A stretch of DNA of 64,000 nt from contig NW_026262648.1 of NCBI RefSeq assembly GCF_021869535.1, positions 1,364,001 through 1,428,000 on the forward strand, read 5' to 3'. Below are positions 19,124 through 61,536 of the stretch, in pieces. The notes beneath the pieces were generated by a model. That model was not told where the DNA came from. It made no database searches and worked only from the letters and a program-made list of their open reading frames with translations. The stretch's first letter is position 1. The number at the start of each line of letters is the position of its first letter. Source of the DNA: Mytilus californianus (lineage: Eukaryota). The position numbers were made by a program, and so were the translations under genes.

Positions 19124-19830
19124 TTTTTTATGCCCCCGCCGTAGCGGTGGGGGCATTAAGTTTTACCCTTGTCCGTCTGTACATACGTACGTACGTACGT
19201 ACGTCCGTACGTCCCAAAATTGGTTTCCGTTCTCTAACTTGAGTTTGCCTCAACCAAATGTTATGAAACTTATACACAATGCTTATTACCACAAAACACA
19301 GATCAAGTTTGAATTTTGGTGGCGTCACTTTAACTGTTCTAGAGTTATGCCCCTTTATAAATTGAAAAATTGCAAAATTTTTAGTTTCCGTTCTCTAACT
19401 TAAGTTTGCCTCAACCAAATGTTATGAAACTTATACACAAGGCTTATAACCACAAAACACAGATCAAGTTTGAATTTTGGTGGCGTCACTTTAACCGTTC
19501 TAGAGTTATGCCCTTTATAAATTGAAAAATTGCAAAATTTTTAGTTTCCGTCCTCTAACTTAAGTTTGCCTCAACCAAATATTATGAAACTTATATACAA
19601 TGCTTATTATCACAAAACACAGATTAAGTTTGAATTTTGGTGGCGTCACTTAAACCGTTTTAGAGTTATGCCCCTTTATAAATGGAAAAATTGCAAAATT
19701 TTTAGTTTCTGTTCTCTAACTTAAGTTTGCCTCAACCAAATGTTATGAAACTTATACACAATGCTTAATACCACAAAACACAGATCAAGTTTGAATCTCG
19801 GTGGGGTCACTTTAACCGTTCTAGAGTTAT
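19124..19830 (+). mobile_element. HINE-like element with ~3.8 tandem 161-bp core repeats, 3'-truncated
   Basis: 5' hairpin ATGCCCCC..GGGGGCAT and an (ACGT)n microsatellite. Unit starts GTTTCCGTTCTCTAACT at 19223, 19384, 19544 and 19705. Confidence 0.75.
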
Positions 19831-20343
19831 TTCAATTTATATTTCAAATATATTATACAGTACATGACCTTTAGTTGTTAACTTCTATGTCATTTGGTCT
19901 GTGGTGGAGAGTTGTCTCATTGGCAGTGATACCTCATCTTCTTATTTTTATGTAAGTGATGAGATTTAAAAAGAAAACCACAAGATTAGATCAATTTCTA
20001 CCTACATACAGATTAATGTTATTTATATTGCCGTGCAGTTAGTTTATTTTATTGAAGACCACAAATGAATGTATGAATGAAATTTTATGTATTTTGTTGT
20101 GTGCATTGTAGTAAGATTATTTAGTCTTTCATTTTTATTGAAACCGGTTTTATTTTAACTGTGTGTACATGTTTATATACATATAGGTTTCATATTTTAA
20201 ATGTGTTCATTGTAAATCTACCCATAATAGTCATCGTAATAGATTGTAGTTCATAAATAGTACCCCTCAAAAATCAAATTTCACTGGTGATAGGGAAACT
20301 TCCTTTATAGAGACTTTATTTTTGTAAATGTAAGGCCAGTAAT

Positions 20344-20795
20344 GGCCCGAGAACACAGTTATTTTGTAGTGCATTTCTTTTAGACAATAAATTCAAATTA
20401 AAAAAATCGCACCTGCTCTATCTCAAAAAGATTTTTACAGTGTAGTGTACTACTATTGATACAAATAATATCAAAATTATAGAAACTTCTACCAGCTCTA
20501 ACTCAAAATATTGACAATTCTGTGTTTAGGGGGGCTAAAATTCAGTTTGACAGCTTCCGACATTCTAATTTTTGACCTTTTTTAACTGGACCAAATCACT
20601 ACTTAACATAAAGATTCAGCACCCAAATTTTTTTAACATGTAATTTCATCCCCTTACTTAATATTTCATGCATAAAATATCAAGAAATAAATTGGAAAAG
20701 TGTATCAAAAAAAAATGCAAGTTATACACTGTTCACACTAGGGACTATATTCGTAGACAACGAAAACCAAAGGACGATAACTGTGTCCTTGGACC
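20344..20795 (+). repeat. Left LTDR (452 bp)
   Basis: Matches 22090-22541 and is bounded by its own short TIRs. Confidence 0.9.
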
Positions 20796-22089
20796 TAATA
20801 GGATAGAAAGACTTGACCAATTTTAATAAAACTTTGCATGACCTAAGCTTAGGCAATTTTAAGATAGTTGGCCAAGTTTCATGGCCATAGGATATATATT
20901 ATAGAAACTAGGGCCATTTTAATATTGAAATTTGGATGTTTATTTTTGACGTTTAAATCAAATATTTTCAACTGTCAAGATTTTGGCCTAAAATATTTAA
21001 ATATTGCAAAAATTTGCTTTTTAAATACTCTTGAATTTAATATAATAAGTATTAAAAGCAACGGAACACTCATTTGATTTATCAGATTTATTACAGTTAT
21101 TCAAAAGTCAAATTTATATGAGCCTGTGCCTGAAAATAGAGATTTTCGAATTAAGGGAAGTCTTACATAAACATGCATTTTTTTCAACCAATTTGAAGTT
21201 TTGAAGGTTTTTAACCATACATTATTCTTCCATATATATTAAATGTACTTTAAATGTAAAGAAAAGTTACAAAAACCATACCACATGAGTATAAAATGGT
21301 CTTAGGCTATGTAAGACTAAGAATTATTTAGAGTCGATTTAGGCCGTAGCCCATATTTACATATAAAAATGCACACAGAGGCTATAAGGAAGTGAAATTT
21401 GTTACTTTTTGCTCATTTCTATGCTAAGATGTCATGATACAAGAAGTCTAATTGCAAAAGGACTCTTGAATTCAACTTTTTTCTGCAGACAGTATGGTCT
21501 GATGACCAGTTTTTCACTTTTCAATGGAAAACTTGCATGTAGTTTTAGTCTCATTTGGCATATATTTGAACCACTTACTATCCTAAAGAAGAAAATTATA
21601 GTAGCATATGAAATGAATAGGGTGTACTGATCATTGTAAAGTGTTTTTTTTACAGATTTAGTGAAATATTTGTGACGGACTACAGATTTTATGTACAAAG
21701 CTCTTCACATTTCACATACATCAAACAGGCCGTTTAACCAGGGACATAAATACAAATATTCTGCACATTTTTTCTGTGATAATCTACTTTTCTCTAGATT
21801 CCGAGTTCACAAATGGTTAATTAAATTTGATTTAAGCATAGAAACACAAATATCAGGAACATAAAAAGCTGTCAGATAGAAAGTCAGCATGGCTCTTAGG
21901 CATAAAATGGAAACTGCTTTAAAATGCTTATTTTAGCCTTATAATGCCAAAATGGGACATTTTAACAGAATTTCTGTCAAACAAAGATGTAAATCCTTTA
22001 CTTTTATTGAGTTTGACAAATTGAAACCAGAAAACCATTCAGGAAAGTTGCCAAAGTACAGAATCTACATTTACGGAATTCATCTCTTA

Positions 22090-22541
22090 GGCCCGAGAAC
22101 ACAGTTATTTTGTAGTGCATTTCTTTTAGACAATAAATTCAAATTAAAAAAATCGCACCTGCTCTATCTCAAAAAGATTTTTACAGTGTAGTGTACTACT
22201 ATTGATACAAATAATATCAAAATTATAGAAACTTCTACCAGCTCTAACTCAAAATATTGACAATTCTGTGTTTAGGGGGGCTAAAATTCAGTTTGACAGC
22301 TTCCGACATTCTAATTTTTGACCTTTTTTAACTGGACCAAATCACTACTTAACATAAAGATTCAGCACCCAAATTTTTTTAACATGTAATTTCATCCCCT
22401 TACTTAATATTTCATGCATAAAATATCAAGAAATAAATTGGAAAAGTGTATCAAAAAAAAATGCAAGTTATACACTGTTCACACTAGGGACTATATTCGT
22501 AGACAACGAAAACCAAAGGACGATAACTGTGTCCTTGGACC
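22090..22541 (+). repeat. Right LTDR (452 bp)
   Basis: Matches 20344-20795 and is bounded by its own short TIRs. Confidence 0.9.
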
Positions 22542-24359
22542 TAATGAACAGTTGTTTACAAAATATCTCCAATATAGAACATTTTTAGTTGCTCTGGTAT
22601 TTTATCTAAAGTTCGTTTTCTATAAAGTTTTATTGGAATTGTTTTCAAATTATAATTTATGTAGTGAGTTTGCCAATACATATCCAGAGTGAAAAGCATG
22701 CTAAAATTCATATTTAAAAAAAAAAAGAGTTTAATTATGCATCAGATATCTTTAATACCACAGCCATCAAAGTGATAAATAAACATAAACCCTACAACAT
22801 ATACAAGGAGATATGATGGCGAAACAGATACCAATAACATAAAAACTCAAAGTTCTTACAATATACCCTTCCAACCGTGTATGCAATTTATCAAATAATA
22901 ATTAAGGCCTCAATCGTTTAATTTTCATTTCTTTGGAAATAACAGGGTGCAGTCAAGCAAAATCTTATTTTTGATATACTGGTATGTTCCTCCAAAAAAG
23001 CAAGGCACTAATAGCTTGACAAATCATCATGCAATCTTTCATGTGCATATGTCACTTACGATGATGAAAATTGACATTTGTATGATGATGAAAATTGACA
23101 TTATATGCTTCATGATAACATCATTTTGATTCTTTATTAATGAACTTTGAATGAAGTGATTTTAACTCTAGGTTTTAATATTAAGTCTACTTGAAGATAA
23201 GACTTTTTGAAGATAAGTCTTTTTGAAGATAAGTCTTCTTGAAGAGTTAACTCCCCTGATTGAATAGTGCATGGTTTCAACTTACATATTTTACTTGTTT
23301 ATAAAGTATATTTATATATCATTGTTATTCTTTTTTTTTTGAATTTTAAAATTATAGTTTGAACATGTTATTATTGTAAATATGTAAATAATAAAGATTC
23401 AAATAAATTGTGAAATACATAATGAAGTTCATTTGTGAGTTATTTTCATCAGAGACATACATGGGCTGATTTAAGATTTTCAATGCTAAAATAATGTCTA
23501 TTTGTATCATTTCTCTAGTAGAGGAGGGATTTATATCTTATTGTAATCATTATGTCAACTTTTGAGGCATATCCTTTGTTTTTCTATTATAGATATATTT
23601 AGTTCTTATAAGTAATTCCCGTTTGTTCTGAGTATGCATGAAATATTCACCACTGAACAAAAAAAGCATTCACAAATAATTTGTTTCCACAAAGTTGGTC
23701 AAAATGTCCCAAATTGATATTTCATTCAATCACAGTGAAATGAGAAAAAGATGAAAATAAAATTTCTGTGAAATGAATGAATAATATTTTAAAACTATTT
23801 GTAATTTAGATCATTGCAATATGTGTTCACTCTGGTCAACTATTTCTATACTTTACTCATTAATATACTTCTTTAAGGCGAAGTGTACGTAATTAACTAC
23901 TCCACAGAATTTTTTTTAATTTCACATGTGGATTCTGCTTGTAAAAATACATCAGACAATAAAATAAAAAAAAGGGGTAACTGTTTTCGTTTTTCAGATA
24001 CAAGCTGTTGAAATTAACAGCATGATACGCCAAAAATACAAAGGATATATAGGGAAAATCATAAAAATCGGCAGATATTTTTACTTTATCAAGATTTTCT
24101 AATTCGTTGGTCCACAGAATTTTTAAAAAAATCGATATGCGATTCAAAAATGAACGACGAACCCATTGGTGCAAAGAAAGTCCTTAGCAACCGTGCTAGT
24201 TTTCAAGCTATATCCTGTGGAAGTTTGATTTTTAGCGGAAAGAATAAAAAACATTCGGCGACGTTATTGATGTCTACTGTAACGTCATCACAATTTCTAC
24301 TAGATATAACTCTATAACGCTATTATACCGTACAGTGTCGAAACAAAATCGTGAGTGTG

Positions 24360-55938: not shown

Positions 55939-56403
55939 GGTTACAAGAGCGCAATTATTTGTTTACATTCAACCGGCAAAATTTTTACCCCAAGATGGTA
56001 CTCAGAATAAAAAATTTTGAGGCTCCTGATTGGATGATGCAGGTTGGAATTATTTTTTATTTGAAAGCTTATTAATTTAGGTTTGAAAATAGGTGGAAAT
56101 TAAATTCATAATTCACAATGTGTAGAAGATATAATTTTTGTTATTAACTGAGGAGCCATTCAAAATTAACCTTAAGTTTCCAATTTAGTGCGGAATTTGG
56201 AAGCTTCCATAACAACTGCATTTTAGGGCACTTTTTGCCGCATGACGATATACTTATTTTTGGCTGTAATAAAAGGCTGACATCTATAGTCACAGGAGCT
56301 GCTACCCATTTTTATCTAGTTTGTTTATTCTTCAAAAAAAGATTTTTGAATACCACTGGGGTCCTATGGAAAATGCATTACAAATAATTGCGCTCTTGTA
56401 ACC
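55939..56403 (+). repeat. Left LTDR (465 bp)
   Basis: Self-inverted 24-bp ends, followed by TATA. Highly similar to 61087-61536 apart from a ~10-bp and a ~5-bp indel and scattered substitutions. Confidence 0.92.
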
Positions 56404-56413
56404 TATACTGAAA

Positions 56414-56880
56414 ATGGACTTTTACTTTCACTTTCAAAAAACTAAGTATTTTTGGAACTTTTTAAAACACACGAGTGATTTGGATCAATACTCTGTCACA
56501 ATGGATGCCTTTTGGGACAATATTGGACTCAAATTTTTTAAGAAAACTGAAGTTATGGGGAATGGGAAGGGATGTGTTGAATGGGTCGGAGCAAAAAAGG
56601 GAAAATCTTGTTATGGCATACAGGTTGGGAAATGGCCAGGGGGTGAGGAAAAAGGGAGGCTGCACATAGACTGGCATACATGATTAAGCATAGATTGACA
56701 AGATATGATATGCCACAAATAGATGAGAACAACAATAAAGTAGAATGTAGCCATATTTGTGACCAAACTCTCTGTGTCAATCCTGAACACATAACTATTG
56801 AACCTCATGCTATAAATCAAGACTGTAAAAATAAGGGACATTGCTCTAAAAGTCACAAGCCATATTGTTTAATATGTAAT
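56414..56880 (+). pseudogene. His-Cys box (His-Me finger, I-PpoI-like) homing endonuclease, frameshifted
   Basis: Frame 1 reads ..GCVEWVGAKKGKSCYG..KWPGGEEK. After a 1-nt shift near 56655 it reads AAHRLAYMIKH..VECSHICDQTLCVNPEHITIEPHAINQDCKNKGHCSKSHKPYC, matching the SHLCH..C.NP.HL..E....N motif and the second Cys/His zinc cluster. Confidence 0.85.
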
Positions 56881-56895
56881 TTAATAAATAAATAT

Positions 56896-59800
56896 TTATT
56901 TTTTAACAGATCTTTTTCTCTTTCGGTCATTTCTGCTGTATGAATGGTCACTTTGTTTCTGCGGAGTAGATTTCAGTCCTTGATCACATTTTAGCAACAT
57001 ATTTTTTTCATATTCTATTATTTCACTTAGTTTTTCATACAGTTTGTACAGTTAAGCCCTTTTATCACTTCTAAATTGCTTGTATTGCATAGTCTTTTTG
57101 TGCTGTTTTTGCAAAATGTCAACTTTTTGTATTTCTTTTAGAGCCTTGTATGCAGAGCCTCCCACTGGGACTTCACAATGAAGAGCAGTACAAAGTTCTA
57201 GAACTGATTCTCCTGGACCAAAATTAACACTGTGAGCAGCTGAATGAGCACGAACGGTAACATTTCTTTTAAAAGTAACATTTGACGGTAAAGAACGCCT
57301 CAGGCTACGGTTAAATCCCTCAACACAATTAGTGTTCATATTAAGTCTGGTCTTGTCAAGTGTATTTGGGCCAAGACGCAGGTTGACTGTCTTTCTTATG
57401 AAGTCTATATTTTGCTGTGAGTGTGCAATTTTGAATGTTTTTGGTAGTAGTGACCTTCCTGTAAGCCATACTTTCTGTAATCCATTACATAAAAATGAAT
57501 GTTTTTTACACGACGAATGATTTCCAGTGTAACAGTTGACAATTGCATCAACGACATGCGATATTTTACATTTGATTTTTTTAAAGTTTCCACTGTACAT
57601 TTTCCTTGTCTGAGCCAGCTCGGCATTACACCTTTCTGTCAAATCCACTGAAAAATAATTCAGTAGTTTTTGTCTCTTCACTTGTGTTCTTGCTGGCATA
57701 ATCTGTAACAGGTTCTTATCATTCTTCGTACGCTTACGGATATTCTCAGACACATGCCGTGTATCAAGGAAATGTTCAGGCTGAGTACTTATTGTGCCTT
57801 CTTCATACAAATCTTGTGCAGCCCTGTATGCAGAGCAGTCGGTCGGGATCAGTAACCAGGTGCTCAACCTCAATGTTGTCTGCCTTAAGATCAAGGATAC
57901 ACTCTTTGGCCCATGTATATTCATCCCCTATACTTTTGACCATTGGAATGTTGGCACTACATTCATCTGTACACTGTGCATGTAAACGGCCTGTGTCAGG
58001 ATCCACCTCAAGGCTTGAATGTTTTAAACAATGCTTATTTTTGTCGAGCCTTCGACTTTTATCGAAAAAGCGAGACATAGCGATCCTACATTCCGTCGGC
58101 GTCGGCGTCGTCGTCGGCGGCGTCCACAAATATTCACTCTGTGGTTAAAGTTTTTGAAATTGCAATAACTTTCTTAAACTATCCTGGATTTCTACCAAAC
58201 TTGGACAGAAGCTTGTTTATGATCATAAGATAGTATCCAGAAGTAAATTTTGTAAAAAAAAAATCATTTTTTCCGTATTTTACTTATAAATGGACTTAGT
58301 TTTTCTGCCAGTTAACATTACATTCACTCTGTGGTTAAAGTGTTTAAAATTTTAACAACTTTCTTAAACTATCCTGGATTTGTACCAAACTTGGACAGAA
58401 GCTTGTTTATGATCATAAGATAGTATCTAGAAGGAAAATTTGTTAAAATTTTGTTCCATTTTTTCCGTTTTTTACTTATAAATGGACTTTGTTTTTCTTC
58501 CAGTTAACATTACATTCACTCTGTGGTTAAAGTTTGTAAAATTTTAACAACTTTCTTAAACTATCCTGGATTTGTACCAAACTTGGACAGAAGCTTGTTT
58601 ATGATCATAAGATAGTATCCAGAAGTAAAATTTGTAAAAAAAATCCAGTTTATCCGTATTTTACTTATAAATGGACTTAGTTTTTCTGCCAGTTTACATT
58701 ACATTCACTCTGTGGTTAAAGTTTTTTTTAAATTTTAACAACTTTCTTAAACTATCCTGGATTTGTACCAAACTTGGACAGAAGCTTGTTTATGATTAAA
58801 AGCTAGTATCTAGAAGGAAAATTTGTTAAAATTTTGTTCCATTTTATCGTTTTTTACTTATAAGCGGACTTTGTTTTTCTTCCAGTTTACATTACATACA
58901 GTCTGCAGTTTAAGTTTTTAAAACATGTATTAGATTAAATAAACTATCCTGGATTTTTACCAAACTTGGACAGAAGCTACTTACAATCAAAAGATAGTAT
59001 AGAGAGGAATATTTTTATTAATTGTTTTCCTATTTTTGTTGAGCCTGCGATTAACAGCAAAAGTAGGCGAGACACTGGGTTCCGCGGAACCCTTACGATT
59101 TTTTTATATTTACGTTAGTATATTATGGTCTGTTGTTATATTTTCAGCTGTGGTATAGACAGTTTGTGTTACAGGCTGAAATGGAGTGCGTCCAACACCG
59201 GAATACAGCGGATTGTTATACATTCCGTCCATCTGCAAACTGATTGTGTTTGGATCTTCCTTCCCTCTGAGGCTATTGATTTCAATAATTTCATTTTTTC
59301 TTTTTCTCAGGTCCATTTTATTCACATCTACGATGTTTTTAAGGACTTTATTTGCTCTTCTTTGTAGACTGGATGCTGCTGGTGCCTGCATATTACCACT
59401 TAGAATGATTTTGCGCATACTGGAGGAAGCTATTGGTGTCTGACTCAGGCCAACATGTACAGCTGTATCTAGTTTTGATGGTTTTCTGCCTGGCTTTCCT
59501 GTTTCTAATTCTTCGTTTAAGCTTTACATATCCGATATATAACTGCAACTTGTACAAATCGAAATCTGGCGAGAAGAGAATCCTCTTTTCTCCTCTTTCT
59601 CTAGATCGCATGATAGTTTACCCTCACAGGCTGGACGTTTTTGCTGGTGCTCCCTAAAGGCCTTGTTCCACATTTCTTCCATCTTGTAAACACACACCGT
59701 ACTATAAGAATTGAAGTCAGGCCTGGAAAAACACAAAAAAATTGCACATTTACACCTGTAATCAAGAATATTTTCAACAAATAATTTTTCTGAATTAGAG

Positions 59801-60381
59801 TTACCTGCCCTTTGCTTGGGTATGAATTTTTTTAAACTGACTGTTGGACATTTTGACATAGTTTTATAGGGCTAATTATCTCTATTTCATTTAAACAAAA
59901 CATAAAATTACTTAATTTTAGAAGGAAAAGACAGAGTAAATTCCAGTTTAATATATTTTTAGTGTAAGAAATGTGAAATTTTATGAATTTTCAGTATATT
60001 TTAGCAGTTTTAGACCTACTTTGTACTGTGATATTACTTAATTGTTCATCTGTAACTGTTTTCTCTATTTAAAAATTAGATTATATATTTTTTCCTTACC
60101 TTTTGTCATTTACAGCAGGATTCCTGTTGGTTTTTTTTTGGAACAGAGACCTCATCAGACTTTGGTCGCAGTAGTTTGGCCGCACGAGCAGACCGCCTGC
60201 CTTTTTCCTCTGGATCAGTGTATGGATCATTTACTACTAAATTGTACTTTTTCATGGTAAGTCTTGTATATTTAGGTGTGTCATAGTCACTTTTCACTGG
60301 CAATAGTTTAGTCCTATTTTTGGTATGAGGTATACTTCCAGCCTTAAATTTAAAGATATTTCTTTTTTTGAACCCAGACAT
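56896..60381 (-). pseudogene. Kolobok-type DDE transposase, disrupted
   Basis: Pieces 60381-60106, 59722-59110 and 58037-56896 join into one protein: C..C.Y.S..GRKP..GLSQT, MDGMYNN (D1), VTDPD (D2), NTNCVEGFNRSLRRSLP (E), ending DHSYSR..KRKRSVKK*. Lesions: stops at 59524 and 57052, frameshifts near 59110 and 57840, and a 1-kb HINE insertion. Probable introns near 60099-59870 and 59804-59723. Confidence 0.85.
58040..59100 (+). mobile_element. Helitron/Helentron-like non-autonomous element with ~4.5 tandem 190-bp units, nested in the transposase
   Basis: Inserted in a T-run. It has a (CGT/CGG)n microsatellite near the left end, units CATTCACTCTGTGGTTAAAG at ~58131, 58321, 58513 and 58702, and a perfect 16-bp terminal palindrome GGGTTCCGCGGAACCC at 59077-59092. 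Confidence 0.82.
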
Positions 60382-61086
60382 ATTGGAATTGTACAGTTTT
60401 CACTTTAATTATTTAGTGTTTGTAAAGCTTTTATATACCCTTGTAAAGTAGGACAGTATTTTATCTTTTTTCAATAAAAGTTGAATGGAAAGTTCATTCA
60501 GTAATTAAAAATATTTGAGATTGAGCACATGCCTCCCTCAAAATTTGACAAATTCTCTACACAGGCCATATGATAAACTTTGGATTTTTTTATTACCAAT
60601 ATGAAAACAACCACTTTTAATTGCTATCATTCCTATATCTCTTATCTTCAGTAATAAAAACATAAATGATAAAGATCCAGAGTGCATCTTCAGTACACTT
60701 TATTTTCAAAAATATATGACAAAAAGTCCAAAATTTGGCTAATTTTGACAATTTTAAGAAAAGTAAGGGTAGAATCCACCCTGAATGAACATTTGATTCA
60801 ACTTGTACATGCATAAAGAGAAATGTTAATTTTATAAACAAAAACACTAAACAAATGAACTTTTAATGTTATTTAATGGTATTTTTTTTATTTTCATGAC
60901 AGCATTCTTGAAATCTGTAGATGAAATTCCTCTGTGGCCGCAAGGCACGGGTTGCTCCTTCATATGGTAGTTTCTCATAAGTAATTCTACCAATTTCTTT
61001 CAAACTTGGTATTTCTTCCTAATATAAGTTCTGTGTTTAACAGATACATTTTTGTCCTGATTCGAGTCAATTTTATTCTTTCTATA

Positions 61087-61536
61087 GGTTACAACAGCGC
61101 AATTATTTGTTTACATTCAACCGGCAAAATTTTTACCCCAAGATGGTACTCAGAATAAAAAACTTTGAGGCTCCTGATTGGATGATGCAGGTTTTTGTTT
61201 GAAAGCTTATCCATTTAGGTTTGAAAATAGGTGGAAATTAAATTCATAATTCACAATGTGTAGAAGATATAATTTTTTTATTAACTGAGGAGCCATTCAA
61301 AATTAACCTTTCCAATTTAGTGCGGAATTTGGAAGCTTCCATAACAACAGCATTTTAGGGCACTTTTTGCCGCATGACCATCTACTTTTTTTTTGCTGTA
61401 ATAAAAGGCTGACATCTATAGTCACAGGAACTGCTACCCATTTTTATCTAGTTTGTTTATTCTTCAAAAAAAAAATTTTTGAATACCACTGGGGTCCTAT
61501 GGAAAATGCATTACAAATAATTGCGCTCTTGTAACC
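61087..61536 (+). repeat. Right LTDR (450 bp)
   Basis: Preceded by TATA (61083-61086) and followed by the ATAT TSD. Confidence 0.92.

What the first reader, a model, noticed from the sequence alone, without database searches (positions are those of the whole stretch)
20344..22541. Second, non-coding composite element with apparently identical 452-bp LTDRs: a very young non-autonomous partner
Seen: LTDR-1294 bp-LTDR with its own 19-bp TIRs and a TAAT duplication. The two LTDRs have the same length and I saw no differences by eye, implying very recent insertion or homogenisation. The interior has no intact ORF. Inference: a non-autonomous KolobokP-like element (analogous to TRIMs among LTR elements) mobilised in trans by an active family elsewhere in the genome.
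Basis: partly seen in the sequence, partly recalled or inferred. Interest (0 to 1): 0.78.

Follow-up and report, generated by a model that had tools for sequence, protein, structure and literature searches.

The report
Young non-autonomous KolobokP transposon copy
This is a recently inserted, non-coding copy of a KolobokP DNA transposon in a mussel genome; other individuals still carry the empty site and intact transposase-bearing relatives sit elsewhere in the genome, so it is a clean but expected member of a kind described in 2022.

Summary
Window 20344-20795 and 22090-22541 are identical 452-bp direct repeats (LTDRs). Each has a 19-bp imperfect inverted end (16/19). They enclose a 1294-bp interior with no gene, and TAAT flanks the whole element on both sides.

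It is one transposition unit. Contigs from three other individuals, in three studies, run from 20339 straight to 22542. That is the exact empty site with a single TAAT.

The family is very abundant in this genome:
- About 2,560 LTDR 5' ends.
- About 1,400 LTDR/interior junctions.
- Monomers and a solo LTDR flanked by different 4-bp duplications.
- Tandem arrays, the largest at least 200 kb long.

A likely helper exists. It is a 4,880-bp element with at least six open copies about 99% alike. It encodes a 712-aa transposase and a 140-aa His-Me nuclease on the opposite strand. Its 453-bp LTDRs share our terminal 22 nt and 19 of the last 20 nt. Its LTDR matches the published KolobokP-2_MyCo.

All of this fits KolobokP as described by Kojima and Bao (2022), who already reported non-autonomous families, solo LTDRs and multimers and drew the TRIM analogy. 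I did not find this 2,198-bp family in their data, so it is a new member of a known kind.

Identical LTDRs are not an insertion clock here. Youth rests on the empty alleles. The scan had already noted KolobokP copies elsewhere in this genome.

The parts
20340..20343 (.). Left copy of the 4-bp target-site duplication, TAAT
   Evidence: The empty-site contigs keep a single TAAT.
20344..20795 (+). Left LTDR, 452 bp, GC 32%
   Evidence: 452/452 identical to the right LTDR. Aligns end to end with the LTDR of the autonomous relative at about 60-63% identity.
20344..20362 (+). 5' terminal inverted repeat of the left LTDR. The first 22 nt (20344-20365) are identical to the autonomous relative.
20777..20795 (+). 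3' terminal inverted repeat of the left LTDR (16/19 with the 5' end). The last 20 nt (20776-20795) match the autonomous relative at 19/20.
20796..22089 (+). Interior (INT), 1294 bp, non-coding. Begins TAATAGGA and ends CTCTTA, as does the interior of the autonomous relative; otherwise unrelated to it.
22090..22541 (+). Right LTDR, 452 bp, with the same inverted ends at 22090-22108 and 22523-22541
22542..22545 (.). Right copy of the target-site duplication, TAAT
20410..20421 (+). One of the internal LTDR blocks conserved with the autonomous relative. The others are 20425-20434, 20488-20498, 20552-20560, 20589-20600 and 20756-20766. They are candidate protein-binding or cleavage sites (inference).

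Best explanation
The 2,198-bp stretch is a monomer of a high-copy non-autonomous KolobokP DNA transposon. It consists of two 452-bp long terminal direct repeats, each with its own inverted ends, around a 1,294-bp non-coding interior.

Shown:
- It entered this site as one unit and duplicated TAAT.
- The site is still empty in other individuals, so the insertion is recent and segregating.

Inferred:
- It is moved in trans by the transposase of a KolobokP-2-type autonomous family in the same genome. That family has the same terminal 22 nt, a nearly identical 3' end, the same interior-boundary bases, and several shared internal LTDR blocks.
- After insertion, copies of the family can collapse to solo LTDRs or grow into (LTDR-INT)n arrays by unequal exchange between LTDRs. 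Kojima and Bao propose that the helper's His-Me nuclease promotes this.
- The two LTDRs are identical because the source lineage was homogenised before it transposed. The identity is not a by-product of insertion.
For: Structure.

One insertion unit and polymorphism: contigs of three runs from three studies join 20339 to 22542 with no gap. These are X1 record 1 (1799 nt), X15 record 8 (2170 nt) and X3 record 17 (1466 nt). They lie at single-copy depth and account for nearly all the depth of the flanks.

Other copies with different 4-bp duplications: monomers with AGTA and ATTT, and a solo LTDR with ATAT.

Abundance, at up to 2 mismatches with controls of 0: 2,562 LTDR 5' ends, 2,009 LTDR 3' ends, 1,396 INT-to-LTDR junctions and 1,407 LTDR-to-INT junctions.

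Multimers and INT-INT junctions.

Helper:
- 33 LTDR starts of the GGCCCGAGAACACAGTTATTTTCC type, in pairs about 4,428 bp apart.
- In L032 a 4,880-bp element flanked by TGAT on both sides.
- A 712-aa ORF matching PF20700 at E 3.6e-68, and on the other strand a 140-aa ORF matching PF05551 at E 1e-10.
- Six units with both frames open, about 99% alike.
- Its LTDR aligns end to end with ours.
- Its LTDR reads nearly the same as the published KolobokP-2_MyCo LTDR (by reading). That is the only one of the 228 published families holding the core of this inverted end.

Homogenisation: the rare T at 20527 occurs in only 5 LTDRs of the genome, including both LTDRs of this copy and both of a monomer on C1.

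Private changes of this copy: 3 in 2,198 bp.
Against: - Trans-mobilisation is inferred from shared ends only, and no activity was measured.
- The helper's LTDR is only about 60-63% identical overall, and the interiors are unrelated apart from 6-8 boundary bases. The relationship is therefore old, and a closer helper may exist or may have been lost.
- The runs are assembled contigs, which drop rare variants. I could not see whether the filled allele is also present in those individuals, and allele frequency is not known.
- The copy census comes from short patterns and gives lower bounds.
- Only the 40 best LTDR matches were examined in sequence.
Confidence: 0.88

Rival explanations
1. Two independent insertions of a 452-bp MITE happen to bracket 1.3 kb of ordinary host DNA. 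On this reading the composite is accidental and not mobile as a unit.
For: Each LTDR has its own inverted ends. The left one alone is flanked by TAAT on both sides. A solo LTDR with its own 4-bp duplication exists.
Against: - The empty allele lacks exactly the whole 2,198 bp plus one TAAT in three individuals.
- The same interior is joined to the LTDR about 1,400 times in the genome.
- Whole monomers elsewhere carry their own 4-bp duplications.
- The interior's TAAT start is a family feature shared with the autonomous relative.
Confidence: 0.01
2. This is a local tandem duplication or short satellite array: 1.26 units of a 1,746-bp repeat that arose in place by replication slippage or unequal crossover, with no transposition.
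For: The family does form arrays with a period of about 1,747 bp. One has 18 LTDRs on C154 and one is at least 200 kb on C1.
Against: - The element is bounded exactly by the inverted ends and a 4-bp duplication.
- The empty allele has none of it.
- The flanks are single copy (table 2).
- Near-identical monomers lie on other chromosomes with other duplications.
Confidence: 0.03
3. It is a true non-autonomous KolobokP copy, but the family is no longer mobile. On this reading the polymorphism is an old insertion still segregating, or lost from other haplotypes by clean excision or deletion, and the proposed helper is not what moved it.
For: - The helper's LTDR is only about 60-63% identical, and no chimeric or intermediate element was found.
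- Mussel populations carry deep variation (general knowledge).
- This copy has 3 private changes, so it is not brand new.
Against: - Family copies are 98-100% alike.
- This copy's sub-lineage has only three loci.
- Three of three other individuals show the empty site with an untouched single TAAT. KolobokP excision is reported to remove 1-5 flanking bases (PMC9587614).
- The helper has at least six open copies about 99% alike.
Confidence: 0.08

Closest known systems
Non-autonomous KolobokP families (for example KolobokP-N5_CGi at 1738 bp, KolobokP-4N1_CorFlu, KolobokP-N1_MyEd), Kojima and Bao 2022, PMC9587614
   Same: - LTDR-INT-LTDR plan with an LTDR of about 450 bp.
- Short inverted ends inside each LTDR, beginning GG and ending CC.
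- A 4-bp duplication with no fixed target.
- A non-coding interior.
- Solo LTDRs, multimers, and INT-INT junctions that lack a few bases.
   Different: - This 2,198-bp family (452-bp LTDR, 1,294-bp interior) is not in their Table S1 for any Mytilus species.
- Ten probes from its LTDR ends, LTDR interior and INT (four end probes; six internal probes) were not found as this family in their sequence files. One end probe matched only the KolobokP-2_MyCo LTDR.
- Its LTDR count of about 2,560 is near the top of the range they list.
- Its largest array, at least 200 kb, is far longer than the multimers they tabulate.
KolobokP-2_MyCo (autonomous, 4884 bp, LTDR 453/456, inverted end 19, duplication 4; Mytilus coruscus)
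   Same: - The autonomous relative found here is 4,880 bp with a 453-bp LTDR.
- Its LTDR sequence reads almost the same as the published one.
- Our element shares its terminal 22 nt, its 3' end at 19/20, the interior-boundary bases and six or more internal LTDR blocks.
   Different: - Our LTDR is only about 60-63% identical overall.
- The interior shares nothing detectable beyond 6-8 boundary bases.
- Our element has no transposase gene and no nuclease gene.
TRIMs (terminal-repeat retrotransposons in miniature)
   Same: They are small non-coding elements with long direct terminal repeats. They are moved in trans and are prone to form tandem arrays and solo repeats.
   Different: - TRIMs move through RNA, and their repeats are remade identical at each insertion.
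- This element has inverted DNA-transposon ends inside each repeat and a 4-bp duplication.
- It relies on a DDE transposase helper, so repeat identity is not an insertion clock.
Bacterial composite transposons (Tn5/Tn10 type) and IS26 pseudo-composites
   Same: Two self-contained, individually mobile end modules bracket a passenger segment. Either the whole element or one module can move.
   Different: The end modules here are non-coding and always in direct orientation. The enzyme is supplied from another element, and the host is an animal.

Membership tests
KolobokP (non-autonomous member) | [quoted passage not shown] | tested here: met
   452/452 identical repeats around 1,294 bp.
KolobokP (non-autonomous member) | LTDR length near 450 bp or near 660 bp | tested here: met
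   452 bp. The criterion is from PMC9587614.
KolobokP (non-autonomous member) | Each LTDR carries its own short inverted ends, with 5'-RR and YY-3' termini | tested here: met
   19 bp pairing 16/19, starting GG and ending CC. Found only at the four expected sites, with 0 expected by chance.
KolobokP (non-autonomous member) | A 3-5-bp target-site duplication around the whole element, with no strict target | tested here: met
   TAAT here, and the empty allele has one TAAT. Other copies have AGTA, ATTT and ATAT. Helper copies have TGAT and ATAT.
KolobokP (non-autonomous member) | The family also occurs as solo LTDRs, as (LTDR-INT)n-LTDR multimers, and as INT-INT junctions with a small deletion | tested here: met
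   - Solo LTDR: L004.
- Arrays: 18 LTDRs on C154 and at least 200 kb on C1.
- INT-INT junction: L026, where a few interior-end bases are missing.
KolobokP (non-autonomous member) | [quoted passage not shown] | tested here: met
   In L032 and others: a 712-aa ORF (PF20700, E 3.6e-68) on the + strand and a 140-aa ORF (PF05551, E 1e-10) on the - strand. The terminal 22 nt are identical and the 3' end matches 19/20.
KolobokP (non-autonomous member) | The helper's transposase falls inside the Kolobok superfamily by phylogeny and signature motifs | tested here: inconclusive
   No tree was made. Pfam files the domain under 'Mutator-like transposase'. Assignment to KolobokP rests on the near-identity of its LTDR to the published KolobokP-2_MyCo, read by eye, and on the shared gene layout.
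KolobokP (non-autonomous member) | Mobilisation in trans by that transposase | not testable with these tools
   Needs an excision and integration assay.
TRIM / LTR retrotransposon | TG...CA repeat ends, a primer-binding site and polypurine tract, and a 4-6-bp duplication made by integrase | tested here: not met
   The repeats begin GG and end CC and have 19-bp inverted ends. There is no tRNA-related sequence. The resemblance is functional only.

The most novel reading that the evidence does not exclude
The long arrays of this non-coding element may act as homogenising nurseries. Unequal exchange would make all LTDRs of an array alike, and monomers cut out of the array would then seed new loci with already identical LTDRs. 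That would explain why a variant found in only 5 of about 2,500 LTDRs sits in both LTDRs of two monomers on different chromosomes. A stronger version is that transposition passes through a one-LTDR circle that regenerates both LTDRs. Either version would make KolobokP a DNA transposon with LTR-like concerted ends and a direct route from transposon to satellite DNA.
Probability: 0.2. Interest if true: 0.55.

Novelty: new member of a known kind. Interest (0 to 1): 0.33.

Why it matters
KolobokP is known from a single descriptive paper, and no activity has been shown for any member. This locus provides three things:
- A dated-by-population, precisely bounded insertion with its empty allele.
- A very large non-autonomous family.
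- A short list of intact candidate helpers in the same genome.

Together these are the materials for a first mobilisation assay. They also allow a test of whether the helper's His-Me nuclease drives array growth. As an element type it is expected, so its value is as a practical test case.

Tried and rejected
- The other KolobokP in this window (55939-61536) as helper: rejected. Its LTDRs show no similarity to ours. Its proteins are only 26-32% identical to the proposed helper's.
- The interior as an internal-deletion derivative of the helper: no similarity beyond the first 8 and last 6 bases. Local alignment scores were within shuffles for the whole interior and marginal for the end 200 bp.
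- Protein remnants, Pfam domains, Rfam families or tRNA in the element: none.
- A chimera of our LTDR with the helper's interior: 0 exact matches.
- Looking for the family in the 2022 paper's sequence files with ten probes: absent. These are machine-read PDFs with line breaks, so the negative is weak.
I did not try to obtain those letters by another route. The duplication census therefore rests on four non-autonomous and two clean autonomous insertions.

Full report
**1. What is in the sequence**

Window 20344-20795 and 22090-22541 are 452-bp direct repeats with no difference between them.
- Identity ends exactly at the left edge. On the right it runs four more bases, TAAT.
- Each repeat starts GGCCCGAGAACACAGTTAT and ends ATAACTGTGTCCTTGGACC, a 19-bp inverted pair matching 16/19. 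At up to three mismatches this motif occurs only at the four expected places in the window, with none expected by chance.
- TAAT lies at 20340-20343 and 22542-22545.
- The 1,294 bp between the repeats has no ORF over 88 aa. It has no Pfam domain, no trace of transposase or nuclease, no Rfam family and no tRNA.

**2. Is it one mobile unit?**

The left repeat alone is also followed by TAAT, so two readings were open: two separate small elements, or one composite. Three lines of evidence settle it.

First, I laid public contigs of four runs on window 19300-23600.
- In three runs of the same species label, from three different studies, one contig runs from 20339 directly into 22542. These are X1 record 1 (1,799 nt), X15 record 8 (2,170 nt) and X3 record 17 (1,466 nt).
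- Each has 440 or more bases on one side of the join and 1,020 or more on the other.
- That is the exact empty site, ...GGCCAG TAAT GAACAG..., lacking the 2,198-bp element and one TAAT.
- These contigs are at single-copy depth and make up nearly all the depth over the flanks.

Monomers on C99 and C88 are flanked by AGTA and ATTT. A solo LTDR on C57 is flanked by ATAT.

Third, the TAAT that follows the left repeat is the first four bases of the interior in every copy, and also in the autonomous relative.

The element therefore inserted as a whole and made a 4-bp duplication. Other individuals lack the insertion.

**3. Size and shape of the family**

Short diagnostic patterns, allowing two mismatches, gave these counts. 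Reversed-pattern controls gave 0 throughout.

| Feature | Count |
|---|---|
| LTDR 5' ends | 2,562 |
| LTDR 3' ends | 2,009 |
| Interior-to-LTDR junctions | 1,396 |
| LTDR-to-interior junctions | 1,407 |

Many units lie in arrays.
- There are 18 LTDRs at a 1,748-bp period on C154:22,526,803-22,556,973.
- One array on C1 runs from about 58.94 Mb to at least 59.14 Mb, where the listing was cut. Its spacings are 1,747 bp, about 3,040 bp and about 4,325 bp. The longer spacings mean that an LTDR is often missing between interiors.
- L026 shows such an interior-to-interior junction with a few bases lost.

These forms are the ones described for KolobokP by Kojima and Bao (PMC9587614).

**4. The likely helper**

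The 2022 paper's sequence file holds the core of our inverted end once, at the start of the KolobokP-2_MyCo LTDR. A pattern based on that start found 33 LTDR starts in this genome, many in pairs about 4,428 bp apart. I fetched seven such places.

- L032 carries a 4,880-bp element flanked by TGAT on both sides, with 453-bp LTDRs.
- It has a 712-aa ORF on the + strand with a transposase domain (PF20700, E 3.6e-68).
- On the other strand it has a 140-aa ORF with the His-Me homing-endonuclease zinc loop (PF05551, E 1e-10).
- Six units (two in L031, and L032, L033, L034, L036) have both frames open and are about 99% alike. L035 and L037 are broken.
- The exact LTDR-to-interior junction of this family occurs nine times.

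Its LTDR aligns with ours from end to end at about 60-63% identity.
- The first 22 nt are identical.
- The last 20 nt match at 19.
- Shared internal blocks lie at 20410-20421, 20425-20434, 20488-20498, 20552-20560, 20589-20600 and 20756-20766.

The interiors share only their first 8 bases (TAATAGGA) and last 6 bases (CTCTTA). No element combines our LTDR with the helper's interior. The KolobokP copy at 55939-61536 of this window is a different, distant family.

Shared ends, shared subterminal blocks and open helper genes are what trans-mobilisation requires. That this transposase actually moves this element is an inference.

**5. Age, and what LTDR identity means**

In LTR retrotransposons the two repeats are remade identical at insertion. 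In a cut-or-copy DNA transposon they are not, so identity does not date the insertion.

The T at 20527 and 22273 is almost absent from the family in the reads (table 3). It occurs in only five LTDRs of the genome:
- both LTDRs of this copy;
- both LTDRs of a monomer at C1:21,821,579-21,823,772;
- one LTDR on C24.

The source of this small sub-lineage therefore already had two alike LTDRs. Other elements also share private variants between their LTDRs: the C88 monomer, the C110 units and the C154 array. The C99 monomer has one private change in each LTDR.

Against its C1 sister and eight other copies, this copy has three private changes in its interior and none in its LTDRs, about 0.14%. Youth is therefore supported, but by the empty alleles and the low private divergence.

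**6. Comparison with what is known**

Every structural criterion of KolobokP that I could test is met (see the membership table). The paper already lists non-autonomous families of 1.5-3.7 kb, solo LTDRs and multimers. It draws the TRIM comparison itself.

New at the level of detail:
- The family is apparently uncatalogued. It has no 452-bp-LTDR, 2.2-kb entry for Mytilus in Table S1, and the probes were absent from the sequence files.
- Its empty allele has been seen in natural individuals.
- Its arrays are very long.

A run labelled as another species (X9) lacks these flanks but holds family contigs at about 600-fold depth that are 98-100% identical to this copy's interior. The family is therefore shared across close species.

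**7. Limits**

- The reads are assembled contigs. I cannot give an allele frequency or show the filled allele in other individuals.
- Only the 40 best LTDR matches were inspected in sequence.
- No transposase tree was built.
- Earlier notes of this scan report other KolobokP copies in this genome, including an intact one and a trimer. They fit what I found independently, but I did not check that they are the same loci.

Noticed in passing
G000 C1:58,943,265 to at least 59,143,449 (outside the window): One + strand array of this non-coding element spans at least 200 kb. More than 85 junctions were listed before the list was cut. Spacings are 1,747 bp, about 3,040 bp and about 4,325 bp, so many LTDRs are missing between interiors. 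This looks like a transposon turning into a satellite.
   Followed up: partly
G000 C1:56,313,571-56,349,714: A second array has the same LTDR-to-interior junction but periods of about 2,813 bp and about 3,991 bp. This points to a variant with a longer interior.
   Followed up: no
L028 (G000 C110:38,439,096-38,440,007), and the joint 20800 to 22089 in run X15: Two LTDRs are separated by only TAATAAAGA, so the interior is reduced to 9 bp. The same junction stands at depth 448 in run X15, so it is a multi-copy derivative.
   Followed up: partly
window 20795/20797 to 21817 (joints in run X15): Contigs skip about 1,020 bp of the interior at depth up to about 1,900. This points to a shorter deletion subfamily of roughly 1.18 kb.
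   Followed up: no
window 19223-19830: A 161-bp tandem repeat of 3.8 units lies just upstream. Its summed contig depth in the reads is about a million-fold, so it belongs to an extremely abundant repeat of this genome.
   Followed up: no
L031 (G000 C121:49,039,800-49,049,700): The autonomous 4,880-bp element itself forms a multimer, with four LTDR starts 4,428 bp apart. Both genes are open in the two units examined.
   Followed up: partly
L019 (G000 C13:1,858,040): An odd partial copy reads interior 562-1294, then LTDR, then interior 1-564, as if cut out of an array at matching points.
   Followed up: no
L033 (G000 C137:694,200-700,700): An intact autonomous copy is flanked by CTTT and ATAT, so it has no matching duplication. 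It may be a product of recombination between copies or part of a larger structure.
   Followed up: no
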